DNA of 64,000 nt from Styela clava (Eukaryota): positions 11,718,001 to 11,782,000 of the forward strand of contig NC_135258.1 in NCBI RefSeq assembly GCF_964204865.1. The letters are read 5' to 3'. This document shows, in pieces, positions 4,001 through 34,257 of this stretch; position 1 is the first letter of the stretch; every line of letters begins with the position of its first letter. Made by a program: the position numbers and the translations under genes. Below the pieces are notes generated by a model. That model did no database searches. It was not told the DNA's origin and worked only from the letters and a program-made list of their open reading frames with translations.

Positions 4001-7000
4001 TTATCTATGATTGCCTGCGTTTCGTGGAAATTTATGAATAGTCAGAAACAAAATGAATATAATTTCAGTTATCGCTGGCTATAATTAACAATACAAATCA
4101 GTAATTTCTATGTTGTTGTCTATTTGGTTGTATTAAAATGAGATTGTATGAAGAAGGATCATGATGGAAATTCCTAGAGTGAAAATAAGGCAACCATATA
4201 CAGTGGTCACAATTGATGAATCACAATTTCTCCAATGGTTTATGAAAAGAGTAAATTAAGTTCTTGAATATCTTACTTCGCATCTGGGAACATCAAATAA
4301 TGGATACTTTCAGCATTTTCTTTAGATTTCAAAACTTTCTTGAGATTTTGATACATATGCTCAGTAAGGAACGGAGTAAATGGACTCTGAAAAAAAAAGG
4401 ATTACAGACTGCATAATAGATGTATTTTTGTTATCATGTGACATTTTTTGTGCGGCTTATTTACAAGCCTTTTGCTCCAAACAAGGAAGTAAAGTCATTA
4501 ACAACTAGTACATATTCACTCGCTAAAATCCAAGGCCACCCACCCAAATAGGCCACCCAAGCCCCCCCCCCGAAGCCGTGCCTTGCAATAAAACACATAA
4601 AAAAAATCATTTATAGTAAAATGGCAGCTGATCTGCATTTTGATTAAAGATAGAGTTTTGGAATCATAAAAACTTACCATTTCTCTAATCATTGTGTACA
4701 GAACACTATAAAGTGTTTGCAATGCTTTTTGACAATCTTCAGGTCCACCGTCACCCTGAAACATTCAAAGAGTCAAGTGAATTGTCAGCTATAACTTGCT
4801 CTTTGACCTGATATTATATAAACAAGATTAGAAGAAGCTCTATAATAATATAAAAAGTTAATTAGACAACTTCAAATCAATATAAAAAGGATTGTTTATC
4901 ATTTAAATAGAGAATAAAAAAGCATAGAAAAAGAATTGTAATAAGGATAGGATTTCATATTTATACCAGGGAGAGAAGAACGACAAAAAGGTTTACCTCT
5001 CGTCCGGTTACCAGTCCATGTCAGGTATGGGATTTGTTAGCCAGATATTTTGTTTTTGAAAAAATGGAATTGATGGTGGAAGTAGCCATAAGCCCCATGT
5101 AACATTGATTAAGAAATAAACTCAAGAAAAATTTCCATTTTAAAAGCCATTTTATAGTCAACACACTTTAAAATATGTATTTATAATAATATATACGTTA
5201 ATAATATAAGTTACATTCGCTGATTCAAAGTTGCATCATCCAAAACTGATAAAAGAATTTCCATAAAAGGCGACCTAGTCATAGGTAAACATATTCTATC
5301 ACAGAAAACTACTTGTTTTTGAAGTTTGGCAATGAAATTCACCTGGAGCTCAAACAAGGTTCTATTTGTAATCCATTCTGGTTATTTCCTACAATGTTTA
5401 CTTATCTGATAATATTATCAAAGGTTACTTTGAGAATTTGGAGTGTTTTATACAGAGTAAATAGTAATATTAGGATTTTTATTGGCATTGCTATCCAAAA
5501 AATTGGATTTTCTTAATATTAAATGTCACCCTTCTTTTGATAAATCGAATAAATCAAAATGAAATTTAATTCCAGACGTAAAAGCATATAAGATTGAAAA
5601 TCTAGACAAACAAATAGTGATTTATCACTGCACCCATTAGGGTAAACATGCTGTAGTATACCAGAATAAGCGGTGTGAGTAGTAATGGCGTATTAAAATA
5701 GATATATGTTGATTAAACCTTCAACAAAATCTCAGATTTTATTAAAAATCGACAACCTATTTTAAAAGTAAAATAATTCTCTGTAATAGTAAAACTACAA
5801 TATTAGAATGCAAAAAATGCTATTTTATTGAGGCACAATGTTATCTTCCAATAACGTTATAAAACTTATTCAATTACAGTGCATAAAATAGAGATAAACG
5901 TGTTTAACTAAAATTTAAACACACATATTCCCAATAAATATCATGGACATCCACAAATTTAACTAAAACAAGCAAATATAAAAACCTTCAATCTTTTCCT
6001 GTTTGATCTGACGTACCAGTTTGTCAATAAATCCACAAATTTGACCAATCGAGGAACGACAGTATACAAGTGGTATGCTGCAAAGTAAAATATCCAATTC
6101 ACCAAATAAGATAGTCTTAATGAAAATCAATTATTGAGAAGCGCAAGTCGCTGTGTTATGAAAATAAAGTAGCACTGCACAATGAGACCCACATGGCTTC
6201 ATTATCATGCAATGTCATTTGCACAGCATACATCATGGTTGTCAATTGCAATATATTTTAAAATCTCGTTCGTTTATGTTGATACAGTAGCAATGCTCAA
6301 GATAAAATCCTAAAATATTATGCAAATGATTTTCTCTAAGGATTCAACTTCAAAATGTTTTGACAAATATGCAATAGAAGTCCATGTTTATTTGATCATG
6401 AAGAGATATGTTCGATAAAAAAAATTGAAACATTTTGATAAAGAAAATTTTGGAATTTTGGCCAAACTATTGGCAATTCAGATTTAGCTTGCACACACAA
6501 TTTACATGGATACGATGATAGGCTAAAGTTTCAACTGCGATTGAGATATCACACCTTTCATTTCCTTTTTCACATACAGTACAAGTGATTGTATTGATGA
6601 CAGAATCCATTTGTCCATTATGTTGTCTGAACTTCCAAGATCATCTTCTTTGTATTTGAATTCAATGCCTTCTTCCTTTTGAAGCCTTAAAACAAGTGCA
6701 ACTTCATTTTATTGAAATAAGCAATGGATGAAATTTGCATTATAATTTTGAACAAATAGGAGTGAATATGACATTGGAGTATTTGGTTGTATTAAGGTAT
6801 AAAAATAGGATCGCTTTAAAATGACTACGGCTGCTTCTCATTAATATAAGACATGATGGAAATGCTAACACATTCCCAATTAAACCAGAAGAGTGATTAA
6901 AATTTAATAAACTGAAATTTTTGTTTCTACAAATTGAAATTTGAATTGGTCCAAAACTTACCTTATTACGTTCTGCACAAAAAATCTGTATGCATTGTAC

Positions 7001-21236: not shown

Positions 21237-21359
21237 TTTAACAACTGAACACGAAATTTCTGCAACATCAAATGAAGAAAAGCTACCCACGGAAGCTGTG
21301 AAAAAACTGCTGTATCTTTGGTGGCGAATGTGTCCTATAGTGGTGGTAGCATAAAAGTC

Positions 21360-21640
21360 ATATTGGGGATGGCAGAATAGGGATGGCGAAATACGGTCGA
21401 AAAGTGGCAGATTAGGGATGGCGAAATAGGGACGAAAAGTCAAATTGGGGATGGCGAAATGCGGTCGAAGCGTGGCAGATTAGGGATGGCGAAATGCGGT
21501 CGAATGGTGGCAGATTAGGGATGGCAAAATGCGGTCGAAGCGTGGTGGCAGATTAGGGATGGCAAAATGCGGTCGAAGCGTAGTGGCAGATTGGGGATGT
21601 CAAAATGCGGTCGAATTGTGGAGCAGATTAGGGATGGCGA
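21360..21640 (+). repeat. Tandem array, 35/38-bp unit TTAGGGATGGCGAAATGCGGTCGAAGCGT(GGT)GGCAGA (left arm of outer element)
   Basis: About 8 units read directly. Confidence 0.9.
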
Positions 21641-21734
21641 CGTTTGAGAAAGTGAAGGGCATGGTGTCAGTGTTACCGTACCGTACATCGGTACCGGTAC
21701 CATTAGTGGTGGTAGCCTAAAAGTCTCATTGCGC

Positions 21735-22450
21735 GCAGCGCATTAGGAGCAGCGCATTACGCACAGTGAGGCCGCATTAGGAGCAGCGCATTGGGCACAG
21801 TGAAGCCGCATTAGGCGCAGCGCATTGGGCACAATGCGATATCGCATTAGGAGCAGCGCATTGGGCACAATGCGTGGTGGCATTAGGAGCAGCGCATTGC
21901 GCACAGTCAGGATTGACAATTCATCCATCCATTTTATCATTGTTTATGGAATCTATAATGACAAGCTAGACACGACTTTTAAAAAGTAGCAACAGTAATT
22001 CGACTTGAATTGGTACTCGAATTTGCTGGAACTCGGCTGATGATACGTTACTGTAATTTGCTCGTTGCGAGCATCGCATTAGGAGCAGCGCATTGGGCAC
22101 AGTGAGGCCGCATTAGGAGCAGCGCATTGGGCACAGTGAAGCCGCAATAGGCGCAGCGCATTGGGCACATGCGAGATCGTATTAGGAGCAGCGCATTGGG
22201 CACAGTGAAGCCGCATTAGGCGCAGCGCATTGGGCACAATGCGAGATCGCATTAGGAGCAGCGCATTGGGCACAATGCGTGGTGGCATTAGGAGCAGCGC
22301 ATTGCGCACAGTGATGCCGCATTAAGAGCAGCGCATTGAGCACAGTGAAGACGTATTAGGAGCAGCGCATTGGACACAATACGTGGTCGCATTAAGAGCA
22401 GCGCATTAGGCACAGTGAGGCCGTATTAGCAGCAGCGCATTACGCACAGT
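21735..22450 (+). repeat. Tandem arrays, 34/36-bp unit TTAGGAGCAGCGCATTGGGCACAGTGAGGCCGCA, in two blocks (~21735-21910 and ~22070-22450)
   Basis: Units read directly; each block is followed by a related CAGGATT...GGAATCTATAA...TTCGACTTGA segment. Confidence 0.9.
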
Positions 22451-22889
22451 CAGGATTTAGCATTATTTATGGAATCTATAAAGTCGAACTCGACTTTTAA
22501 ATAGAATTCGACTTGACTTGGCAATCGAATTTGCTGGGACTCGGACCGGTGATATGTAGCCCCAATTTTATGGGGTATTCCATACATCCCATTCAACAAG
22601 GCTTTGCATAAGAAGTTACTAATACATCTGCTATGCATTTTAGAAAAAAGTTATGAGTGTTCCCATAAATATGTGCGATTAATTCACATGATGATTTCAA
22701 CTTTCCTCCATCCTGAATTGAATGCAATTATATCGTTCTTAACCTCGATCTTTATGCAAAATAAAAACAACAGCAGTGGAAAATGATATTATGTTTAATT
22801 ATACCACACACATAACATAAAGGAAAGAGATTTGAACTGTCATTTATTAATATTTTTTTCTAATCACTTATAGTCATAACATATTTTAA

Positions 22890-23318
22890 TTATTTGCTTA
22901 TATCTTTGAAGTTTATGCTCAGATGTCTCAGCTCTGGAAGGAGTTTCTTCTGATGATATTTTAATTGTTTGACCATACGGCGGGTTCTTTTTTGAAATTT
23001 AGGTCCATGTTCACTTCCACCTTCATGCATCAAAACCCCAGCTGCGTGAACCATTTCGTGTATTATTATTCCCAACCTTTTCTCCCTAGATTTGATAAAA
23101 ACGATTGAGAAGTCTTTATATATCGAAACTTATTTATCCGTTTCCTCTGGCTCATTTTTTGACGACTTCATGAAAATGTTTCGTAAAGCTTCGAAATGTA
23201 TCCCTGTGGATTCGCAGTCGTCGCAAGTCCATTTCGAATCTTCTTCGTGGTTTACTTCAGGAGGTTCTCTTAGACATTTTCTGTGAAACTAAGTTCCGCA
23301 TGCCACGCATTTATGCAT
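22890..23318 (-). pseudogene. PHD-finger + SprT-like zinc metalloprotease fusion, disrupted by 2 in-frame stops (cargo of the inner foldback)
   Basis: One frame: MHKCVACGT*FHRKCL...KWTCDDCES...FEALRNIFM...DK*VSIYKDFSIVFIKSREKRLGIIIHEMVHAAGVLMHEGGSEHGPKFQKR...*. Stops at 23289-23291 and 23130-23132. CxxC-x4-HxxC...WxCxxC fits a PHD finger; HEMxH...HGxxF fits the SprT/GCNA family. Confidence 0.72.
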
Positions 23319-24004
23319 TTTTCACCGTCGTCAGGCATACGGCGCGCGTATTAATTTGAATTCATACTACAGTATAGGAAGACGTGCACTTGTGATATTT
23401 ACTGTCCGAGTCCAATCCACCTTGGTTGGCTTTTATATTGGGTGCATTGCTGTTTTATTCTTTATATTTAATCTTAGTCTTATTTCGGTGGGTGTGCAAA
23501 GCGTGTTATATTGATAAAATATATATTTTTAAACATAAAAAATAATGTAATTGAAACTGATTAGCTATTTTGGGGATTAGACATTGTAGATACTGAGAAT
23601 TACATTCGATTTTGGAATGTTTAGTTTCCAGGACTGGTGCATATAGTAAAGTTGCAAAATTGCGTATGTCCCCAAGTCATTGACACATTTCTGACTAAGT
23701 CACAGTGCGTTAATTAACTGCGTCATACAAATTAACTCAAATCCGGCAACAATCAAAAAATTGAACCATGACAAATTATTGACTCTCAATGGCATAACAA
23801 TATCATTAGGAAGTTTTTTATGTTTTTCTCAAAACTGCTAAATATGACTTACGCAATTCGGTTATTAGCGTGACGATATTTAAAAAAAAAACGATTGGAA
23901 ATGTTTATTGATAAATGGAAACTGGAAAAGAGCAATTTTGGAAAAAGTTTTATAGTTACTCATAGCCATTTAGGCATAAACAATCAAAGTTGTATAAGGC
24001 TTTG

Positions 24005-24114
24005 GGTACTCGTGAAGTATGTGCACCAAGATGTCGCACAACCTGAACCCTAACCTTGTGTACAACCTGAGTTCAGGTTGTGCGCCATCTTGGTGCGCAT
24101 ACTTCAGGTCGTCC
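24005..24114. mobile_element. ~110-bp palindromic MITE, Merlin-like
   Basis: 8-bp TSD AGGCTTTG (23997-24004 and 24115-24122); starts GGTAC; near-perfect foldback TGAAGTATGTGCACCAAGATG...CATCTTGGTGCGCATACTTCA. Confidence 0.8.
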
Positions 24115-25359
24115 AGGCTTTGTTTAATAAAAGTTCTATAGATTGCCTTTTACCCCATTGAAACAACTCGAACAATTTAAGCCACATGTTTTGTGTTTCT
24201 GGCTATATTTTATCGGTGTACATCACCCACACATGAATATGCATTTAATGCTACATACCGTCAATATGATGATAAATATCATTATGATAAATACAGGAAA
24301 ATCACAAAAACAACATATAAAATGATTTGATTTTAAAATAAACATTGCCGCAATCAGAAAATGGTTTGTTTTTAATTTTCTATAAGATTTGCGCTTGACC
24401 TATTCAGTTTAAAAAAGTATTCAGACATAAACTGGTACTTCCATGAACAGTTTACCAGTTACATTTCCTTAATAATTTACATTGAATAATCAAAATCTAA
24501 TAAATACTGCCTCACTTCTGAAAATATACTCTGAAGTTCACAAATATGTTAAATCTTGTAACGCATTATCGCTTTTATATTTCTCTATTTTAATGTTTTT
24601 TCCACGATTTAAATTAATTTTGAACTCAATCTATATCTTCAATGATTATTCTGAACTGAATTATATGTGATTCAGAATCATGGGGCAAATTTAAGTCAGA
24701 TGTGTTTTTCCAACGTTTCGTTGGATCATAGCAAGAATTCTTTGAACAAACATACTTATGATAAAAAAGCAACCGCAAGTAAACATGCACAGTGAGAATC
24801 GCGCCTGGTATGTTGAAGAATCAATGAAACTTTTGAATGCATCATTAACAGTGGGGAACTTGGATGATAAAGCTGATTGAAAAGTATTCAGCGGATTTAT
24901 ATTGAGTAATTTATGTCAATAAGTATGGCATTATCTCTTTTCACGAAATAACAGGTATATTTGTAAGCTTTCGTTAGATCATAGTCTAACTCCTTTAGAC
25001 AAACAAGCTATAACTGCAGATATGAATGTTTTCTGATCCTCATGTCCAAAATAGTTTGCAGTCGTCTATAAATCTTCGGTATGTCTTAATAATCATTATA
25101 TTCTCATCGAAGTTATCTGGCACAATAAGACAAATATATTTTCCTATTGTTTCGTCTGACCAATTTCAGACATACATGATTCCACTGTAACAACAAAAGG
25201 CAAAGCTGTTAAATTACAGTAACGTGTCACCAATCTAGTTCTATCAAATTCGAGTACCAAGTCAAGTCGAATCACTGTTGCTACTATCTAAAAGTCGAGT
25301 CTGGCCTGTCCTTATAGATTCCTTAAACAATGATAAAATGGATGGATGAATTGTCAATC

Positions 25360-25612
25360 CTGACTGTGCACAATGCGCTGCTCCTAATGCGACCTCGCAT
25401 TGTGTCCAATGCGCTGCTTTAATGCGATCTCGCATTGTGCCCAATGCGCTGCGCCTAATGCGGCTTCACTGTGCCCAATGCGCTGCTCCTAATGTGATCT
25501 CGCATTGTGCCCAATGCGCTGCGCCTAATGCGGCTTCACTGTGCTCAATGCGCTGCTCCTAATGCGGCCTCACTGTGCGTAATGCGCTGCTCCTAATGCG
25601 CTGCGCGCAATG
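25360..25612 (-). repeat. Inverted copy of the 34/36-bp array (right arm of inner element)
   Basis: Reverse-complement units such as TGTGCCCAATGCGCTGCTCCTAATGCG. Confidence 0.9.
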
Positions 25613-26256
25613 AGACTTTTAGGCTACCAACCCCTCTCACCGGTACCGTACGAACATTTTAAGGTTCTTAAGTTTAGCATGTAGCCTAAATGTACCTGCA
25701 TATGCCAGGATACGGTAATAGGTACCACCTACCGGTACGTACCGTAGTGAGTACGGTACCGGTATGTGGCCCATTACAGCATTACCGTAATCTGTTAATG
25801 CTAATCCAGTCCTTGACGGCATGGGCAGTGTAGAGAATGGCAGTAGACAGAAAATAAGAGATTTAACATTCTTCTGGTTCAAATTAGGCTACTCTGGCAA
25901 TTGTTTTGGTGGTAATTACAAGGACAGTACGGTACCGGTACCGTACCAAGACTTGGACTTTTAATTAATATGGTAACGGTAGACTACGGTACCGGTACGG
26001 TACCGTATCATTGGACTACGGTACCGGTATGCCTTCGCGGTGGAATTATTGTGTGGCAAGATGTAGGCACGAACACGGTATGTCAAATTGAGACTGGTAA
26101 CATTGCAGCATTGTGTGGAGCAAGCGATAAACTAAAAAGTGAAACTGCTAAAGCCATTTGACTGTTTGAGTGAACTCCGCAGACCTAAGCAAAAAGTTAA
26201 TATGCATTCTAACCATTTGATATATTTAATTGCTGAATTGTCTAACTTCAAATTAG

Positions 26257-26535
26257 CAGTGGTGTGGCTCATCGCATGCTAAGCCTGTGAGCGCAATAAG
26301 CTTGGCATCGCACCTCTTATTACTTACACTATGTCAGTCTGTGTAGGTTCGCAGGGTAAATGTGGAGATTGTTAGGAATACGCTCGTCACCCCATGGTTA
26401 TGTGCGAGAGGATTACTGGACTCCTCGTCGCAGTTGGGTGGTTCACATAACTGCTGGTCGGTCACAGCTTCCTCCACCATCCAGCCATCTGGTCCATTAT
26501 CTCTCTCCTGGGATAGATATGTAGATCCTATCGTT
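26257..26535 (+). mobile_element. tRNA-derived SINE-like element; relatives at ~4944-5100(-), ~9785-10078(-), ~12110-12315(-) and ~34795-34929(+)
   Basis: A-box-like TGGCTCATCG head; B-box-like GGTTC(A/G)AATCC seen in sister copies; shared 3' end CTCTCC..GGGATA(A/G)ATATGTA(A/G)ATCCTATC. Confidence 0.6.
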
Positions 26536-26782
26536 AATCCGAGCGAGACACATGTCATGTTAATTAACTGTAGTAAAAGCCCCGAACTTCCAATTCCATT
26601 ATAAAATTTGATCGTAAATGACATTAAGTCTATAATGACTACTTGAAACTCTGTCAAGTATTTTGATATAATTTCAGATATGAAGATTAAGGTTATCTAG
26701 TCTTTAGGGATATTGCTGCAATGACTGAAGTGAGTCTATTTGTGCCAGAAAGGGGATCAAGAACTTTATAGTTTGCACTTTC

Positions 26783-27152
26783 AACAAGAGAGCGATGCTC
26801 AAATATATGGACATGCAGCCTGAGCGAAGCAGTAGTCCAGCTTACCTTTGACGGTTCGCTAAACACTAGAAGCACCAATGTTCGCTGACCTCGTGACCCG
26901 CTGCGCACGATGAACCGCCACATGGTGGCAATTTTTGATGAGGTCATAGCACAAAAGAAATGAATTCCATGCAGCTCTCAGAAATATTGGAAATACATGA
27001 AAGTAATAGCCTTCAGGCAAATCAATCTTAAACCATTGAAAATTTCAAGGCAATTCGTCCAGTAATCAACAAGAAAAGCGGTTTTTCAATATGTGTCAAA
27101 GAACAACAACATAATAACAAAACGATCCATAGGTCCACTACATGCGCACAAA
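26783..27152 (-). mobile_element. HINE copy, same family as 19286-19536
   Basis: Shares ACAAGAGAGCGATGCTCAAATATATGGACA, AAGTAATAGCCTTC, AGAAAAGCG and GTCAAAGAACAACA...GTCCACTAC. More diverged relatives at ~55465-55710 and ~57040-57190. Confidence 0.62.
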
Positions 27153-28147
27153 TGAATTGTGACATGGGACTTGATATAGTTTTATCTCCAAAACTATCTT
27201 TGTACTTCAAAACTGTGTTTTGAAGTTGATGACCGGCTCACATACTCTACTGTGTATTGGTTCAATCTGCAAATATTCTGAAACTTGAGAATGTTTATGA
27301 ATTTGAAGTGCTGAAACTTACGTTTCAGTTCAGATTTGGTATCATTGCTTCGGACAACTCATTAAAAAGTAATAATAATCGTTCAGCAGACGGAGGTTCC
27401 TATTTTGTTATAGTTAACTTTACCCTGGTACAAAAATGTATTGAAGATACTTTCTAACACAATAGCTCCGTGTAGTATTTCACAAGTTCTTGGAATATGA
27501 TTATGTTCAAATTTCATAAAGGAACCATTCTAATCTAGTAATATTTAATATTTATTCAGCATTTTAGCTTATAAGGCAAATGTTAAATGAGAAATTAGAT
27601 ACTTGTTATTTGTAAAGGGCATATAAAAATTAAACTTTAGTGTATGTTTGCTAATCCATGTTAGTAAGAGCTGTTTATTTGCCATAATTGCTTCTATTAA
27701 AATAATTTTCCTATTTTTGTTAATGTAACTTGGATCAATCATAAAAATCACTCTCATTGTTAATCTTGTTTTATAGTTTATTTATTGCTACTGTTTTTTA
27801 TGCAAACTGTATTCCAATTGTTGCATCCAAGGTTATCCATCCAGCTAATCTAAACATTTTTATGACAGATCAACTTTTTCATAGATTTCACCTAATAGCA
27901 CATAGTCAGCCCTATAGTTATCATTTTATTTACACAAACATTTGAAAGAGTGCTATCTCCTGGTCTGATCCTTTACTGCCCCGAATATTTTATCATTTCG
28001 ACTTGCTACTAGTATGCAATCTCACTTACTTTTGTGATTTCCATTTTCGTGTCTTGAAGACATTCTCATAAAATTCAGTTCCTAACCCTACCTAAAATCA
28101 CTGAGATCACACAATCGCTGAGTTTGAATACCTTTATATGTTTAATA

Positions 28148-28275
28148 GGTGCTCCCGTGTGTGCATCCCGTCCCAGCATGTGCACCAAGATGGCACACAG
28201 CCTGAACATAGTATGTGTACCACGTTAGGGTTATCAGGTTGTACGCCATCTCAGTGCACATACTACAGAAGCGTC
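28148..28275. mobile_element. Merlin-like MITE, same family
   Basis: 8-bp TSD GTTTAATA (28140-28147 and 28276-28283); starts GGTGC; shares TGTGCACCAAGATGGCACAC. Confidence 0.75.
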
Positions 28276-30691
28276 GTTTAATAACCTAATAGCTCTATTT
28301 GTGCTACTGTTCAAATTAATGTCACTGACTTCAACTTGTGTACACAAATTCCAAATATTTATTTTTTTTCTTCAATTAACGTGCAACATACTAAATTGTA
28401 TTTGTTTGAGATTCATTTTTCCAAGATACAGAATTATGTTTTAATTACCTTTCAGTATTTTTTGCCAATTATTAAACACTATTTATGGGGACTGTAGCAT
28501 TTGTGTACACGATATTATATACTTTGTCTAGTCCTTGTTTGTTTTGAAGTCAATCAATAAGATCTGATTTCATTCATGAATCATAACCACTTTGTACTAA
28601 TGCATTGTCTGCAATCCTAAAATAACAATTCCTCTGCTACTACTCCATACTGTGTTATTTTGTTCTTGTTATAAGATAAACTTGTTATTTATGTGGGTGG
28701 GTGCATATGCTGTTATATATATTCTATAATGAAGTTCCTGATTACTTTCTGTAGCAATAGTTTTCAGTGTGTAATCTTGAAATCTTGCAGTGAAAATATG
28801 TCTTCCCCCAGATAGCATTTCCTAGCATTTACTAAGTCCTTTGGTTAAGTTCATGTTTTAATATGCCAAACTATGCATGGAAACACAATGTAATTGTGTG
28901 ACAACATTTCGAATCAATATGATATACTGGTGTTATATGCTTTCATTATTATAAAATATTGTAAATTAATTTCTCAATAATGTAATAATTTTTTATTGGT
29001 TGGATATCCCAATTTTTGTTTTCACATTTTGAACCTTACTGTAAATGATGTAGGATTTCCCATTTTGCATTTATACCCGATATCTTTATAGCATCATGTC
29101 ATCTCAAATGTCATCTCTTTATTTCCGTTTACAACTTCTTTCTTGCGCGCATGTATGAATAAACATGCATGGTTCACTAGCATTTGCATGTTTTCTCATG
29201 AATGTCCTGCTTATAATTTTCTTAAAAGCAGAATGAAAAACTATTGTAATTTATAATTTAACGTTGGTGTTCTTTCTTCTATTTTTATTAATTCCCTGTA
29301 ATCAGGGAAATGCTGATGCTGACACTATTGCTGATACTAAGCGCTCCAATTAGCATTTAACCCTCACTCTCTATGTCTTCCAATGTCATATATTTCTTGT
29401 TGCTTGTGAACACTATTTTTTCAAAAACGGGAATATTCAATTCATCACTTTCATTAGGTGCTGTATACATGATTCATTCTGGCCATTTGAAGGAATATAC
29501 GCTCACTCTCATGTCAGTGCGCTTTCGTTTCTATAATATAAAGCTTTCAAAATCATATCATATTACATGAGCCAACTTTAATGTTGCTCAATTTTGAAAT
29601 GATTGATGATGATGATTTTTTTAAACCTACTTAGTTACAACAACTAGACCATTATAGTTACTTTTTAATGCCTTATACCTTACTTTGAGTCATTCACCAT
29701 TTACATATCTTAAGTAACCAATGCCATTACCTCAAATTTGAAAATACCGTAAAACCTACGATCTCTGGTCGTTCTTAGAGCATCGATTCACGGGCTTGTC
29801 AAACTCTCTGGTCATTTAGTTCAGGGACATTTAATTCATCCCTACATATATACCGTTCAATATGTTTTCAATGTTAGTCTAGTCTTGGAAAGTTTTGAGA
29901 TTGTTTTTATCGTGGAAAACTGAATAAAATGAAATAAAGAGGCCTCCTCATTCACTGTTTTTATCGTGGAAAACTGAAAATGAAATGAAGAGTTTATAAC
30001 GCCTCTTCAATCACGTAGTCGTTAGAGGGTTGTGATTAGAGTGGTAGTGACTTCAACGTGGCAGAAAGCCACTCTGAAAATGCAATTCTCATACAGTGAA
30101 ATCCCGTTTCAAAGCTCTTTTGAAACCACGGGAATATTTACCGTAGTCCGTAGCGTTGGAACATATTTCGGTAATTAGTATTACACAAATTACATAAAAT
30201 CAAGTACAAGATATTACCTTAGTCCTTCAACGTCAAAGATAACGAGTCTAACGGAAAAATTGCGGTAGCGGGTTTACCTACGAGTGGCCAATACCGAATA
30301 GTTCACTGTTTCGAATACATTTGAGGTTCAAAAAACGCTTATCTATAATATGCGAAAGAATTTGCATGGAATAAACAAGGAATAACTGGCTATATTACCA
30401 GGCATTTCATATTTACAGATTACTGCGATATATATTTTAGAATAGTAACGCTTTTATTTTTTCACAAGTCGACGTAATCATGAGTTAGTTACGTTAACAG
30501 ATTTAAATTAAGATGGCAGGGCATTTGAAATAGTGGTATCGGTCATGGATTTGAATATTTGGCGCAACACAAAATCATCCTGGTAAAAAGTTCATACTTT
30601 CAAATACCAACCATTATTCAAATTATTTGCCAAAAAGCGGGATAAAGTATAAATTATTTTTCCGACTTGGGACAATTTTTCCAAGAGTCTG

Positions 30692-31172
30692 AAAATACGA
30701 ATAAAAAATTAATTATATTCAGGCGCTTTACCACACATTTTAAGCCCACAAATTGCCGTTGTATTTTTGAGTAATAATACTTTTATTATTTTGTGAATAC
30801 GAAAATACGAATCAGCAATTAATTATATTCGGGCACTTTACCACACATTTTAAGCCCACAAATTGCCGTTGTATTTTGGAGTAATAATACTTTTATTATT
30901 TTGTGAATACGAAAATACGAATCAGCAATTAATTATATTCGGGCACTTTACCACACATTTTAAGTCCGTGTAGTGTATTTTTGAGTAATATTATTTTGTG
31001 AATACGAATCAGAAATTAATTATATTCGGGCACCTTGCCACACATTTTAAGTCCACAAATTCCAGTAGATTTCAGAGTAATAATACTTTTATTATTCAGT
31101 AAATCCGAAAATAGGAATCAAAAATGAATAATATCGGGCAGTTCACTACACATTTTATGCTCACAAATTGTC
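30692..31172 (+). repeat. About 4 tandem copies of a ~110-120-bp unit, bracketed by a ~200-bp direct repeat (~30487-30678 and ~31186-31395)
   Basis: AATACGAATCAGCAATTAATTATATTCGGGCACTTTACCACACATTTTAAG recurs four times; GGTATCGGTCATGG...AAAATCATCC...TTCCGACTTG.GACAATTT occurs twice. Confidence 0.85.
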
Positions 31173-33079
31173 GTCGCAACCATAAGTTACGTTAAACAAA
31201 ACTAAATTAATAACGCATAATAATTTTATATGCTGGTATCGGTCATGGGTATAAATAATTTGCACAACAGAAAATCATCCCAGTAAAAAGTCGAAACTTT
31301 CAAATATCATTATCAAAATTATTTGCCATAAAGCGGGAAAAAGTATTGATTATTTCCTCTAATAAATCGACTTGTTTTCCGACTTGCGACAATTTATTGG
31401 GTATCATAACAATTACGACATTGAATAACCTTCAATTTCTTGACGTAATGAAAATGAATGTGTAAAATCGTTTGAAGATTCCCGCAAAAACGAAAAACCG
31501 TGTTTACGATGAAAAGAGATATTATTCGAAAATCAGCCGAAAATGTATTCGAATATTTGATTCGTTTTGGACAACCCTGTCTACGAACCACAGTCTTCTT
31601 TTCTACAATACAACAATAATTTTCGACCCAATTCTTTAAAAAGGTTCGCCATTCCTGCTAGACTAACCCATCAAATTGCGTGTTCCCTGACTACTACATG
31701 AAACATTAGCGTTTTCTGACCATCAAATGTTTGAGATTGTTTTGTAAAGTTCAAAAACAATTAGGTTGAAAATTTACAGTTGCAGATTAGTAGTAATTTG
31801 ACTCCAGTGTAAATGTCGAATATTCAGGGAAGTATTTCACTGGCTTTATTTCGCTAAATGTCCGTACAATTATAGAGACCCTGCTCAGCGCAGAATGTTT
31901 TCAAAACATTTCGCCTATAAGTTTATGAAAGTATAATTTCATTTGATTTCAATTGAAAATCTAGAAAGGCTTTTTGTATCTTATACTCACCAGAACAAAT
32001 ATTACAATCATTAGATATGAATATTGAACGTATTACTAGCTCAAAATTAATTCCTCATCAAACGCATTTGAACGCGAAATAACGGTGCACGAAACTACGC
32101 CAGTTATAAGCACCATTAAATATTAAACAATGCGGATATATATAGCACCAAGGTCTAACCCACCCTATTCCAAACAGCACGGAAAATTCGTCGCAAATGC
32201 GTCTTTCCTTGGAATTCAATTGCAACAAAGAACAAGACTTGCGTTACACGTAACACATTAATTTATAAGTTGCTCCTTCGCTATCCAGTAAGACATGGGT
32301 TGGATTCTGTACCAAGTAATGGTAATTATGTTTCTCAAGAAGTAAAGCATGCAAGAAGATTCCTAAAAAGTCAAACTAGTCTTCGACATTTTCTTTCTGA
32401 AAAACGATAAAATGGATGAATTTGGGGGTTTCCAACATTTTGTGTTGAAATCTTCTATTAGTTGGTTTTTGAACTGTTTATACCAAAATCCCTATGTTTA
32501 ATTACCTTGCCTTTTGTAGATTCTTTGCCAGTGTTATACAAAAGTCGCATTTTCCTTTTTACGCAGTTCAAATAGTTTGTCGCGTTTTCATGAATAATAT
32601 TATACAAAAGTGAGTAATACTACAACGTATATTCCTATTCAAAGACTCTCCTCTAGATAGGAATTCACCCAATATCATAAAAATCATTTTATAGCATAAT
32701 ATATCGAACACATCTTTACATCAAAAGGTTATATTCAAATTATAAAACCAATTAACTTCGAAAGAAATTTTGAGAATTGAAATTAACGAAACACGGAGAA
32801 TGAACTCTTCATGCAGTGTGATCGTGAATTATGCCAAAAATATTTTAAAGCAAAACAGGATTCTTCTACATATATACTTGAGCAACTTAAAATATTTGTA
32901 ATTGAAATGAATTGTTTAATAACAGTATTTGGAATAGAAATATCGCAGGCTTCGGGGTGGCGTAAAAAATTGTAGGGACAATAATACCAGGGAAAAATTG
33001 AAATTTTCATGACGAAAGAGATAAAACATATGACCTCATAAATGATGGCACGATCCACAATGCTATGCCAGCCAATGCA

Positions 33080-33189
33080 GACCTCTTGAAATATGCGCAA
33101 CAAGCTGGCGCACAACCTGAACTCAGGTTGTGTACCAGGTTAGGGTTCAGGTTGTGCGACATCTTGGTGCGCATACTTCAGGAGTACCC
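33080..33189. mobile_element. Merlin-like MITE, same family
   Basis: Reverse-complement match to 24005-24114, ending TACTTCAGGAGTACC; TSD not evident. Confidence 0.7.
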
Positions 33190-33439
33190 AAAACTTGATG
33201 AGAGAAACGTAATAATATATCAAACATTAAAAGATTGTATTAAAATTATTAATCAGAAAAATATAAAAAAAAAGTTCAAGACTTGATGAGAAAAATGTAA
33301 TAATATATAAAACAATAAAATTAATCATAAAATAAAGACACGATGTAAAATCGGACAATACCTTTTAAATGAATTTTAAAATGTGAAACACTGATCAGAT
33401 TAGTTCCTTAAATTTGACAATGTTCGTTTCCAAATCTGA

Positions 33440-34215
33440 CACGCATTTCGCCATCCTTAACATGACACCCGTCAACCCACTGCCTTATTTCGCCCTCCTT
33501 AATCTGACACGCATCGACCATATTTCATCATCTCTAACCTGACAGGAGTCGACCCTATTTCGCCACCCCCAATTTGACACGCTTCGTCCGCATTTCGCCA
33601 TCCCTAATCTGCCACGCTTCGACCGTATTTCGGCATCCCTAATCTGCCACCACGCTTCGACCGCATTTTGCCATCCCTAATCTGCCACGTTTCGACCGTA
33701 TTTCGCCATCCCTAATCTGCCACCACGCTTCGACCGCATTTTGCCATCCCTAATCTGCCACGCCTCGACCGCATTTCGCCATCCCTAATCTGCCACGCTT
33801 CGACCCCATTTCGCCATCCCATTTTGACACTCATCGACTGTGTTTTCCCAGCCCGAATTTGACAGGTACTAATCCATTTCATCAGCCCCAAATCTAAACA
33901 CTTTGGCCATATTTCTTTGTAATTTTGAGGCAATTGTTTATTGTTATCTGTATACTAAACAGCGCATTATGACAGTCGATTTGGCAAAAACTGACAGCCA
34001 TCGACCGCATTTTGTCATCCCTAATCTGCCACCACGCTTCGACCGCATTTTGCCATCCCTAATCTGCCACCATTCGACCGTATTTCGCCATCCCTAATCT
34101 GCCACGCTTCGACCGCATTTTGCCATCCCCAATTTGTCTTTTCGTCCCTATTTCGCCATCCCTAATCTGCCACCTTTCGACCGTATTTCGCCATCCCTAT
34201 TTTGCCATCCCCAAT
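33440..34215 (-). repeat. Inverted copies of the 35/38-bp array in two blocks (~33440-33900 and ~34000-34215), right arm of outer element
   Basis: Reverse-complement units such as CCATCCCTAATCTGCCACGCTTCGACCGCATTT; units degrade away from the centre of the inner block. Confidence 0.9.
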
Positions 34216-34257
34216 ATGACTTTTATGCTACCAACCCTCCTCAATGTGTCTAAAATT

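What the first reader, a model, noticed from the sequence alone, without database searches (positions are those of the whole stretch)
21327..34250. Nested pair of related foldback transposons sharing an asymmetric-terminus signature
Seen: two TSD-bounded elements, one inside the other (12.9 kb, TSD AATGTGTC; 3.9 kb, TSD ACCGGTAC). Their left ends are CTATAGTGGTGGTAGC and CATTAGTGGTGGTAGC, and their right ends (reverse complement) are GAGGAGGGTTGGTAGC and GAGAGGGGTTGGTAGC. The outer ~10 nt therefore differ between the two ends of one element but are similar between elements, followed by GGTAGC(A/C)TAAAAGTC and long minisatellite arms. Known: tandem-repeat TIRs with 8-9-bp TSDs occur in Mutator-type foldbacks (Rehavkus, Phantom, FB); Galileo (P superfamily) is also foldback. 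Inference: two diverged subfamilies of one possibly uncatalogued lineage in which left/right end asymmetry is maintained for function.
Basis: partly seen in the sequence, partly recalled or inferred. Interest (0 to 1): 0.85.

Follow-up and report, generated by a model that had tools for sequence, protein, structure and literature searches.

The report
Nested non-autonomous Zisupton transposons, asymmetric ends
Two real cut-and-paste DNA transposons sit one inside the other in this sea-squirt-like genome; they are gene-poor derivatives of the known Zisupton superfamily, not Mutator or P foldback elements, and both families keep different sequences at their left and right tips.

Summary
The outer element spans 21335-34242 and has the 8-bp target-site duplication (TSD) AATGTGTC. 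The inner element spans 21701-25638 and has the TSD ACCGGTAC.

The shared core GGTAGCMTAAAAGTC occurs 120 times in the genome, against 0 for the reversed control. Every paired copy has one left-type tip (..TAGTGGT) and one right-type tip (..GRGGGTT). Of 20 pairs checked, 18 have perfect 8-bp TSDs. Other copies of the outer family show the unfilled site for the inner insertion.

- **Inner family:** its copies carry 3' remnants of a gene encoding a Ulp1 protease, a PHD finger and a SprT-like domain. The window copy keeps only the last two.
- **Autonomous relatives:** these hold an open frame of about 1,242 aa with a CxC4 cluster. It matches a Xiphophorus Zisupton-type protein (E 7e-124).
- **Outer family:** one such frame lies inside a 30.8-kb outer-type element flanked by a perfect TSD.
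- **No Mutator signal:** no MULE domain lies in any element.

The inner copy is 99.4-99.8% identical to two other copies, so the family moved very recently. The end asymmetry is conserved, but its function is untested. This scan had already noted Zisupton elements elsewhere in this genome.

The parts
21327..21334 (.). Left target-site duplication of the outer element (AATGTGTC)
   Evidence: Read directly. It is identical to 34243-34250.
21335..34242 (+). Outer 'A-family' non-autonomous Zisupton-type element. It is 12,908 bp, or 8,962 bp without the nested element.
   Evidence: It is 96-97% identical end to end to copies at C8:10747481, C17:13657144 and C4:14503808. It has no transposase remnant.
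21335..21359 (+). Outer left terminus CTATAGTGGT + GGTAGCATAAAAGTC
   Evidence: Of the 21 A-type left ends held as loci, 18 read CTATAGTGGT.
21370..21640 (+). Outer left arm: 35-bp tandem units, about 7.6 copies
   Evidence: Tandem Repeats Finder. It forms an inverted repeat with 34001-34238 at 97%.
21693..21700 (.). Left TSD of the inner element (ACCGGTAC)
   Evidence: Other A copies carry a single copy of this sequence at the site.
21701..25638 (+). Inner 'C-family' non-autonomous Zisupton-type element (3,938 bp), an internal-deletion derivative
   Evidence: It is 99.4-99.8% identical to copies at C1:9657680-9661607 and C9:4531825-4535754.
21701..21725 (+). Inner left terminus CATTAGTGGT + GGTAGCCTAAAAGTC
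   Evidence: All 9 C-type left ends held as loci are identical.
21739..22454 (+). Inner left arm: two blocks of 34-bp tandem units (21739-21911 and 22075-22454)
22893..23129 (-). Remnant of the 3' end of the transposase gene: SprT-like metalloprotease motif (IIHEMVHA)
   Evidence: Pfam PF10263, E 4e-6, 27.1 bits, above the cut-off. tblastn to P0162 also matches.
23133..23288 (-). Remnant of the C-terminal half of the PHD finger from the same gene
   Evidence: Pfam PF00628, E 0.0022, below the cut-off. It is collinear with the intact ORF L070:6788-7927.
25363..25600 (+). Inner right arm: 34-bp tandem units
25614..25638 (-). Inner right terminus (reverse complement GAGAGGGGTT + GGTAGCCTAAAAGTC)
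   Evidence: Of 12 C-type right ends, 10 are identical.
25639..25646 (.). Right TSD of the inner element (ACCGGTAC)
30691..31174 (+). Internal 110-bp tandem array of the outer element
   Evidence: The array varies in length between A copies.
33486..34205 (+). Outer right arm: 35-bp tandem units in two blocks (33486-33820 and 34001-34205)
34218..34242 (-). Outer right terminus (reverse complement GAGGAGGGTT + GGTAGCATAAAAGTC)
34243..34250 (.). Right TSD of the outer element (AATGTGTC)

Best explanation
The window holds two non-autonomous cut-and-paste DNA transposons of the Zisupton superfamily, one nested in the other. The outer copy is about 9 kb and belongs to what I call family A. A 3.9-kb copy of the sister family C later inserted into its left arm.

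**What moves them.** Neither copy encodes a working transposase. Both are presumably moved in trans by full-length relatives elsewhere in the genome. Those relatives carry one long gene of about 1,240 aa or more. The gene encodes a SWIM/CxC4 zinc cluster, an RNase-H-like DDE core with an inserted SAP domain, a Ulp1 (SUMO-protease-like) domain, a PHD finger and a SprT-like domain.

**How transposition would work (inferred).**
- The transposase recognises the conserved 25 nt at each tip.
- It probably also binds the family-specific 34-35-bp subterminal repeats as arrays of binding sites.
- It cuts the element out and joins it to a target cut with an 8-bp stagger. Repair of the stagger gives the 8-bp duplication.

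**Tip asymmetry.** The outermost 10 nt are not inverted repeats of each other. Each tip type is conserved between the two families. The most likely reading is that left and right ends are functionally distinct in forming the transposition complex, as in other transposons whose two ends are not interchangeable.

**Shown:** the element structure, the TSDs, the copy numbers, the nesting, the recent mobility, the gene remnants, the superfamily of the autonomous relatives, and the fold of the core.

**Inferred:** mobilisation in trans, binding to the repeats, and a role for the asymmetry.
For: **Structure and copies.**
- The ends and TSDs were read directly.
- The core motif occurs 120 times against 0 for the control.
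- Left-type and right-type ends always pair with each other.
- Of 20 pairs, 18 have a perfect 8-bp TSD.
- The inner insertion has a paralogous empty site.

**Coding remnants.**
- C-family copies carry a Ulp1 + PHD + SprT-like ORF.
- The window's inner copy keeps the SprT-like domain (E 4e-6) and half of the PHD finger.

**Superfamily.**
- Homologues of that ORF continue upstream into a domain found in proteins with CxC4, which Pfam describes as a cysteine cluster associated with KDZ (Kyakuja-Dileera-Zisupton) transposases. CxC4 is present in 13 of 20 homologues. CxC7, F-box and SAP domains also occur among them.
- P0254 from Xiphophorus hellerii is 1,393 aa and has CxC7 at residues 1333-1391. 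This matches the platyfish Zisupton layout quoted in PMC12062965.
- P0254 matches this genome at C5:3609436-3612072, with E 7e-124, inside an uninterrupted 1,242-aa frame. The same frame has a CxC4 hit above the Pfam cut-off. It also matches P0158 at 47% identity over 838 aa.

**Link to family A.**
- That frame lies in an A-type element at C5:3600573-3631330. Its left flank GCTAAATC (L025) recurs exactly after its right end.
- Its first 1.5 kb is collinear with ordinary A copies at 86-91% identity.

**Link to family C.** A near-complete gene lies inside the C-type pair C5:13162749..13176887.

**Fold.** An AlphaFold model of the core has mean pLDDT 81.7. Its best match is the IS256-family ISCth4 transposase, with Z 10.3, rmsd 3.6 and 211 residues aligned. 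Tn5 transposase, retroviral integrases and piggyBac follow.

**Recent activity.** Sibling copies of the inner element are 99.4-99.8% identical to it.

**Literature.** Zisupton elements make 8-bp TSDs (PMC12730594).
Against: - The Pfam KDZ core model PF18758 found nothing in a six-frame search of the genome. None of 20 homologues matched it at E <= 1. It was also absent from the Pfam hits (E <= 0.1) of the Xiphophorus Zisupton-type protein, so the model appears too narrow for this lineage.
The 1,242-aa frame inside the 30.8-kb A-type element could therefore belong to a different element nested there. No second GGTAGCMTAAAAGTC terminus lies between the two ends.
- Ordinary A copies contain no remnant of the gene.
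- The TSD of the 14.1-kb C-type element was not checked.
- No experiment or read data show excision or expression.
Confidence: 0.87

Rival explanations
1. The elements are Mutator-superfamily foldback elements (Rehavkus, Phantom or FB type), and are mobilised by a MULE transposase.
For: - The elements have long inverted arms made of tandem repeats, and their outer tips are not inverted repeats. From my own knowledge, such sub-terminal inverted repeats are described for Phantom.
- Some distant relatives of the Ulp1-PHD module are fused to MULE + SWIM transposases, for example P0132.
- The best structural match of the core is an IS256-family transposase. IS256 is the bacterial kin of Mutator.
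Against: - None of the 82 MULE (PF10551) hits in the genome lies within any A or C element or in the long ORFs.
- The full-length gene matches Zisupton-type proteins with E 7e-124 and carries CxC4.
- The TSD is a strict 8 bp in 18 of 20 pairs. From my own knowledge, Mutator elements typically make 9-10 bp.
- P0132 is only 29% identical, and only in the Ulp1 part.
Confidence: 0.04
2. The elements are hAT- or P-superfamily (Galileo-like) foldback elements. Both superfamilies can give 8-bp TSDs.
For: The TSD is 8 bp. The subterminal repeats recall the transposase-binding repeats of Ac or P. The two ends differ, as they do in Ac and P.
Against: - The gene remnants inside C copies and the full-length ORFs are of the Zisupton type.
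- The termini do not show the hAT YARNG start.
- The Hermes and P-element transposase folds score only Z 5.4, against 10.3 for ISCth4.
- The hAT and P Pfam models were not run against the genome.
Confidence: 0.03
3. The left/right tip difference has no function. It is an inherited quirk of a recent common ancestor, and only the shared inner 15 nt matter to the transposase.
For: - All copies descend by copying from an ancestor with one left and one right end, so consistent pairing proves nothing by itself.
- The outermost 4 nt vary in divergent ends, for example TTGA, AGAT, TGCA and CCCC.
- Many transposons tolerate imperfect terminal repeats.
Against: - Families A and C share no alignable subterminal repeats or internal sequence.
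- Against the same reference protein P0001, the A-type frame scores 76% identity and the C-type frames 60-71%. Their identity to each other was not measured.
- Even so, both tip types are kept at 8 of 10 positions in the outer 10 nt.
- Within an element the arms are 97-98% identical right up to position 11 and no further.
Confidence: 0.4

Closest known systems
[quoted passage not shown] 2012; a Repbase superfamily)
   Same: - Both make 8-bp TSDs (PMC12730594) and have terminal inverted repeats.
- The transposase has a CxC-type/SWIM-like zinc cluster, a SAP domain and a Ulp1 SUMO-protease domain.
- There is direct sequence similarity to a Xiphophorus Zisupton-type protein: E 7e-124 to this genome and 33% identity over 842 aa to the bridging homologue P0158.
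   Different: - The transposase region matched here lies in one uninterrupted 1,242-aa frame, and a sister family has a 1,588-aa frame. Published Zisupton genes are multi-exonic (PMC9297572).
- The C-terminus carries PHD + SprT-like domains instead of F-box + CxC7.
- The inverted arms are hundreds of bp long and built from 34-35-bp tandem units. From memory, the fish element has TIRs of about 99 bp.
- The outer 10 nt of the two tips are not complementary. I could not check whether this is known for other Zisupton families, because Repbase was not available.
Kyakuja and Dileera (the other KDZ transposon groups, in fungi)
   Same: They carry related transposases with CxC cysteine clusters. Dileera also makes 8-bp TSDs (PMC12730594).
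   Different: Kyakuja makes 7-bp TSDs and has no TIRs (PMC12730594). These groups are fungal and often carry TET/JBP genes, which are absent here.
Mutator-type foldback-like elements (Phantom, Rehavkus, Drosophila FB)
   Same: They have long inverted arms containing tandem repeats. Phantom has sub-terminal inverted repeats and Rehavkus a PHD finger at the transposase C-terminus (both from my own knowledge). Rehavkus is filed under MuDR in Repbase (PMC4455052).
   Different: No MULE domain lies in the elements. The TSD is 8 bp rather than 9-10 bp. The transposase is of the Zisupton type.
Galileo / P superfamily foldback elements
   Same: They have a foldback architecture with long, repeat-rich arms.
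   Different: From my own knowledge, Galileo makes 7-bp TSDs and encodes a THAP9/P-type transposase. Neither feature is seen here.

Membership tests
Zisupton superfamily | 8-bp target-site duplication | tested here: met
   Of 20 pairs, 18 are perfect, one matches 7 of 8 bases and one has none. The published value is 8 bp (PMC12730594).
Zisupton superfamily | A transposase homologous to the Xiphophorus Zisupton protein, encoded by autonomous members that carry the same termini | tested here: met
   - P0254 matches C5:3609436-3612072 with E 7e-124 in a 1,242-aa open frame.
- That frame lies inside the TSD-flanked A-type element C5:3600573-3631330.
- C-type copies hold the 3' part of the same gene.
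- Caveat: I could not read the DNA of the full-length loci.
Zisupton superfamily | Zinc-chelating cysteine clusters associated with KDZ transposases (CxC type or SWIM-like) | tested here: met
   The CxC4 model PF18717 scores 36.9 bits (cut-off 26.9) in the same 1,242-aa frame. CxC4 is present in 13 of 20 homologues. A CxCx6CxH motif appears in the alignment consensus.
Zisupton superfamily | Ulp1-type SUMO-protease domain | tested here: met
   PF02902 matches the C-family ORFs with E 4e-6. A profile of the homologues matches SENP1/Ulp1 structures with E 5e-9.
Zisupton superfamily | A match to the Pfam KDZ core model PF18758 | tested here: inconclusive
   The six-frame genome search found no hit, and the control genomes also found none. 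None of 20 homologues matched at E <= 1. The family was also absent from the Pfam hits (E <= 0.1) of the Xiphophorus Zisupton-type protein P0254. The model therefore does not appear to cover this lineage.
Zisupton superfamily | Terminal inverted repeats | tested here: met
   The arms match over 238 nt at 97% and over 163 nt at 98%. The outermost 10 nt are not complementary.
DDE (RNase-H-like) cut-and-paste transposases | RNase-H-like catalytic fold with conserved acidic residues | tested here: met
   - The AlphaFold model has mean pLDDT 81.7.
- ISCth4 transposase matches with Z 10.3, rmsd 3.6 and 211 residues aligned. Tn5 scores 7.8, and integrases, Mu and piggyBac score 6-7.
- D110 and D314 are conserved at strand ends, and E424 is also conserved (P0160 numbering).
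- The assignment of catalytic residues is inferred.
Mutator / MULE (Phantom, Rehavkus, FB) | A MULE transposase domain encoded within the element | tested here: not met
   The genome has 82 PF10551 hits. None lies in the A or C elements or in the long ORFs.
Mutator / MULE (Phantom, Rehavkus, FB) | TSD of 9-10 bp | tested here: not met
   The TSD is a strict 8 bp.
P superfamily (Galileo) | THAP9/P-type transposase and a 7-8-bp TSD | not tested
   The P-type Pfam models were not run. The coding content is already explained by the Zisupton-type gene. The P-element transposase fold scores only Z 5.4.
hAT superfamily | hAT transposase with a C-terminal dimerisation domain, and YARNG termini | tested here: not met
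   The termini do not start with YARNG. The Hermes fold scores only Z 5.4. The hAT Pfam models were not run.

The most novel reading that the evidence does not exclude
In this Zisupton lineage the two transposon ends are functionally non-equivalent. A conserved, non-complementary 10-nt tip, together with family-specific arrays of 34-35-bp repeats, would force the complex to pair one left end with one right end, analogous to the end rules of Mu, Tn7, Ac, P or the 12/23 rule. The transposase also carries a Ulp1 domain, a PHD finger and a SprT-like protease. These might process chromatin or DNA-protein adducts during transposition. Neither property has been described for Zisupton as far as I could check.
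Probability: 0.3. Interest if true: 0.55.

Novelty: new member of a known kind. Interest (0 to 1): 0.35.

Why it matters
Zisupton is one of the least studied cut-and-paste superfamilies. No structure or biochemistry turned up in my searches, and few complete families are described outside fish and fungi.

This genome offers a compact and apparently live system:
- Autonomous relatives carry a long uninterrupted reading frame.
- There are two sister families with clearly delimited ends.
- About 60 or more copies carry exact TSDs.
- Sibling copies are 99.4-99.8% identical, which points to very recent movement.

These features would make the family a convenient starting point for a transposition assay. 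Such an assay could also ask what the left/right tip difference, the subterminal repeat arrays and the attached Ulp1, PHD and SprT-like domains do.

For genome annotation, these 9-11-kb gene-less elements would otherwise be labelled as unknown foldback elements or Mutator. They should be labelled Zisupton.

Tried and rejected
**Coding searches within the elements.**
1. ORF scans of five 10.7-kb A copies and the window copy found nothing longer than 168 aa. Ten ORFs scanned against Pfam gave domains only in the C family.
2. I first took the 1.6-1.85-kb stretch shared by the 10.7-kb A copies and one C copy (70-75% identity) to be the transposase or its promoter.
   - It shows no codon periodicity.
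   - It is an unrelated repeat of about 1.66 kb with 30 or more copies elsewhere.
   - So it is a third-party insertion, and my earlier view that the window copy is a deletion derivative was dropped.

**Family searches of the genome.**
3. The MULE search gave 82 hits, none in these elements.
4. The KDZ PF18758 search gave no hits. I do not count this as evidence against, because the archetype-like fish protein is also missed.

**Protein and fold searches.**
5. tblastn of the N-terminal part of homologues against the elements I held found nothing. These copies therefore lack the transposase core.
6. Foldseek against the PDB gave nothing significant. The wider aligner did.
7. A sequence profile against the PDB matched only the Ulp1, SAP and zinc-finger parts.

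**Mapping the autonomous element.**
8. A DNA search with the 8.6-kb window copy scored only 18 of 8,032 candidates. It could not map the 30.8-kb element.

There is no read-level test of an empty allele or of expression.
- The Zisupton type paper (doi 10.1093/molbev/msr208) is not held in the paper library.

Full report
**1. Observation**

- The outer element runs from 21335 to 34242. It sits between two copies of AATGTGTC, at 21327-21334 and 34243-34250.
- The inner element runs from 21701 to 25638. It sits between two copies of ACCGGTAC, at 21693-21700 and 25639-25646.
- The left tips are CTATAGTGGT (outer) and CATTAGTGGT (inner).
- The right tips, reverse-complemented, are GAGGAGGGTT (outer) and GAGAGGGGTT (inner).
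- All four tips are followed by GGTAGC(A/C)TAAAAGTC.
- The arms are long inverted repeats: 238 nt at 97% in the outer element and 163 nt at 98% in the inner one. They consist of 35-bp and 34-bp tandem units respectively.

**2. Is it more than chance?**

The window is C10:11718001-11782000 of a 377-Mb eukaryotic assembly.
- The shared 15-mer occurs 120 times in the genome. The reversed control occurs 0 times.
- The left-type 21-mer occurs 73 times and the right-type 21-mer 60 times, allowing one mismatch. Both controls are 0.
- Wherever two ends face each other within a few kb, one is left-type and the other right-type.
- I examined 20 distinct pairs. Eighteen have a perfect 8-bp duplication, one matches at 7 of 8 bases, and one has none (C4:25341433-25350246).
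- The flanking 8-mers show no obvious target consensus.

The nesting is confirmed independently. Other copies of the outer family carry ...ACCGGTAC|CGTACGAAC... uninterrupted at the point where the inner element sits.

**3. The two families**

I call the families A (core GGTAGCA, 35-bp unit) and C (core GGTAGCC, 34-bp unit).

Family A:
- Copies cluster at 9.0-9.3, 9.9-10.2 and 10.6-10.8 kb. They are 95-97% identical to each other.
- Without its passenger, the window copy is 8,962 bp. It is 96-97% identical end to end to at least three other copies.
- MITE-like pairs of 0.9 and 1.5 kb also exist.
- The 10.7-kb A form differs from the 9-kb form by a segment of about 1.85 kb. This segment is an unrelated repeat of about 1.66 kb with many copies elsewhere. 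A related copy of that repeat also sits in one C element. This explains the non-coding 70-75% similarity I first saw between the two families.

Family C:
- Copies range from 3.5 to 9.5 kb.
- The window's 3.9-kb copy is 99.4-99.8% identical to copies at C1:9657680-9661607 and C9:4531825-4535754. This derivative therefore moved very recently.

**4. Coding content and superfamily**

No A copy has a detectable coding remnant.

C copies carry an ORF on the strand running from the right end towards the left end.
- The ORF encodes a Ulp1 (C48) protease domain, a PHD finger and a SprT-like domain. Examples are L070:6788-7927 and L069:4583-5443.
- The window copy keeps the SprT-like part at 22893-23129 (Pfam E 4e-6). 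It also keeps half of the PHD finger at 23133-23288.

A search of 1.84 billion representative proteins traced the gene upstream.
- It found a 63%-identical Styela clava protein, P0001 (XP_039264229.1), and P0002.
- Both have an additional N-terminal domain that Pfam does not recognise.
- Homologues of that domain are long proteins of up to about 1,500 aa with a CxC4 cluster. Pfam describes CxC4 as associated with KDZ transposases. Some also have SAP, CxC7, F-box, PHD or SprT-like domains.

One relative ties the family to the type element.
- P0254 from Xiphophorus hellerii is 1,393 aa. It has CxC4, SAP, Ulp1, a weak F-box and CxC7 at residues 1333-1391.
- This is the layout reported for the platyfish Zisupton protein, which has CxC7 at 1333-1393 and an F-box isoform (PMC12062965).
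- P0254 aligns with the bridging homologue P0158 over 842 aa (33% identity, E 2e-119).

**5. Autonomous relatives in this genome**

The main locus is on contig C5.
- P0001 matches C5:3608563-3609969 at 76% identity over its whole length, inside an open frame of 1,242 aa without stops.
- The same frame has a CxC4 hit above the Pfam cut-off.
- It matches P0158 residues 176-1013 at 47% identity.
- It matches the Xiphophorus protein residues 48-945 with E 7e-124.

This frame lies between an A-type left end at C5:3600573 and an A-type right end ending at C5:3631330.
- The 8 bp before the left end (GCTAAATC; L025) recur exactly after the right end. A 24-nt pattern combining the right end with that flank hits the genome only once, at this place.
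- The unit is therefore a single TSD-flanked A-type element of 30.76 kb.
- Its first 1.5 kb is collinear with ordinary A copies at 86-91% identity.
- No other terminus with the shared core lies inside it.

For family C, a nearly complete gene (P0158 residues 201-1474, with a few frame breaks) lies inside the 14.1-kb pair C5:13162749..13176887. Another lies next to the C-type left end at C2:18762547.

A third, more distant lineage has an intact 1,588-aa frame at C6:7924828-7929447.

I could not read any of these loci.

**6. Mechanism**

- An AlphaFold model of the core was built from the natural homologue P0160 with an 82-sequence alignment. Its mean pLDDT is 81.7.
- Its best structural match is the IS256-family ISCth4 transposase, with Z 10.3, rmsd 3.6 and 211 residues aligned. 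Tn5 transposase (7.8), retroviral integrases, piggyBac, TnsB and Mu follow. This is an RNase-H-like DDE fold with an inserted SAP domain.
- Conserved acidic residues sit where catalytic residues are expected. D110 and D314 lie at strand ends, and E424 is also conserved (P0160 numbering). This assignment is inferred.
- A DDE transposase that makes 8-bp staggered target cuts explains the strict 8-bp duplications.
- The family-specific subterminal arrays are the obvious candidates for multiple transposase-binding sites. This is an inference by analogy with En/Spm, Ac and Mutator.

**7. The asymmetry**

- Within an element, the arms are 97-98% complementary up to position 11 from the tip. The outer 10 nt match at only 4 of 10 positions.
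- Between families, left tips match left tips at 8 of 10 and right tips match right tips at 8 of 10. The next 15 nt match at 14 of 15.
- Everything further in is unalignable between the families. Against the reference protein P0001, the A-type transposase frame scores 76% identity and the C-type frames 60-71%.
- This pattern argues for constraint on both tip types. It does not prove a function. All copies descend from ancestors with one left and one right end, and the outermost 4 nt vary in older ends.
- I give about 0.5-0.6 to functional non-equivalence of the two ends.

**8. Comparison with known families**

- The family meets the Zisupton criteria that could be tested: an 8-bp TSD, inverted arms, a homologous transposase, zinc clusters and a Ulp1 domain.
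- The only negative is the Pfam KDZ model. That model is also absent from the Pfam hits of the Xiphophorus Zisupton-type protein.
- The family fails the Mutator criteria, because no MULE domain is present and the TSD is 8 bp, not 9-10 bp.
- Repbase lists Zisupton as its own superfamily and files Rehavkus under MuDR (PMC4455052).
- It differs from the fish type element in four ways. The matched transposase region lies in one uninterrupted frame, whereas published Zisupton genes have many exons (PMC9297572). The tail is PHD + SprT-like rather than F-box + CxC7. The arms are long and repeat-built. The tips are non-complementary.

**9. Organism**

The closest named protein is from the ascidian Styela clava, at 59-76% identity. 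I did not verify the species.

**10. Verdict**

The elements are real, nested and recently mobile. They are new families of a known superfamily, Zisupton, not a new lineage and not Mutator or P foldbacks. This scan had already flagged Zisupton elements elsewhere in this genome. The conserved left/right tip difference is the one feature worth an experiment.

Tools that could not be used were fetch from genomes after its first call, the look-up of encoding contigs, and the look-up of sequencing runs, which also ruled out read laying.

Noticed in passing
L063:3721-5568 (= C10:12584020-12585867); also C19:6140741-6142427, C8:8482822-8484505 and others: A repeat of about 1.66 kb with no ORF has at least 30 copies at 87-98% identity. 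It is nested in the 10.7-kb A subfamily. A 70-75%-identical relative sits in one C element (C_C3_042 4240-5881). Its class is unknown.
   Followed up: partly
window 23994-24113 and 33080-33199: A 120-nt sequence is present in inverted orientation in both the inner C element and the outer A element, at 88% identity (pair I6). It recurs in other A and C copies, where its translation shows up as '...MRTKM..NLNPNL...'. It may be a small palindromic MITE or a shared regulatory module.
   Followed up: no
G000:C5:24872171-24872217: Two A elements lie head to tail. The right end of one and the left end of the next abut. Only 17 nt separate the two core motifs, where 20 would be expected. The tips therefore overlap or are trimmed by about 3 nt, with no TSD between them. 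This could be a tandem dimer or an end-to-end insertion. The sequence was not read.
   Followed up: no
G000:C4:25341433-25350246 (L024, L060): This A-type pair of one left and one right end has unrelated flanking 8-mers (GGCCTCTC and AGCGTATT). It is probably a recombinant between two insertions or a flank rearrangement.
   Followed up: no
G000:C6:7924828-7929447 and C19:14073762-14078383: A third Zisupton-type lineage has an intact 1,588-aa open frame with CxC4, the core, Ulp1, PHD and SprT-like domains. It is 52-55% identical to P0001 in the core. Its termini were not seen.
   Followed up: no
for example G000:C13:1018568, C17:367847, C16:20849397, C1:20521700, C3:16339969: Several long open frames of 1,182-1,423 aa contain a Ulp1-like domain only about 29% identical to the one studied here. 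They may belong to the MULE + SWIM + Ulp1 + PHD type represented by P0132. If so, at least two superfamilies in this genome carry this protease module.
   Followed up: no
window about 21243 (minus strand), left flank of the outer element: An ATG opening MSQEGTDPSVAY... reads leftwards, starting about 90 bp from the insertion site. The 12.9-kb insertion therefore sits just upstream of a gene start. Another first-stage note (s1-820002) calls this a TAF8/ELAC1 head-to-head interval. I did not test this.
   Followed up: no
G000:C17:10095020, 10096743, 10106323, 10108046 (L045-L048): Four right-type ends share an identical flank (GTAGATGG + TGCAGGGGTT) and repeat at spacings of 1.7 and 11.3 kb. An old end fragment appears to be caught in a local tandem duplication.
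   Followed up: no
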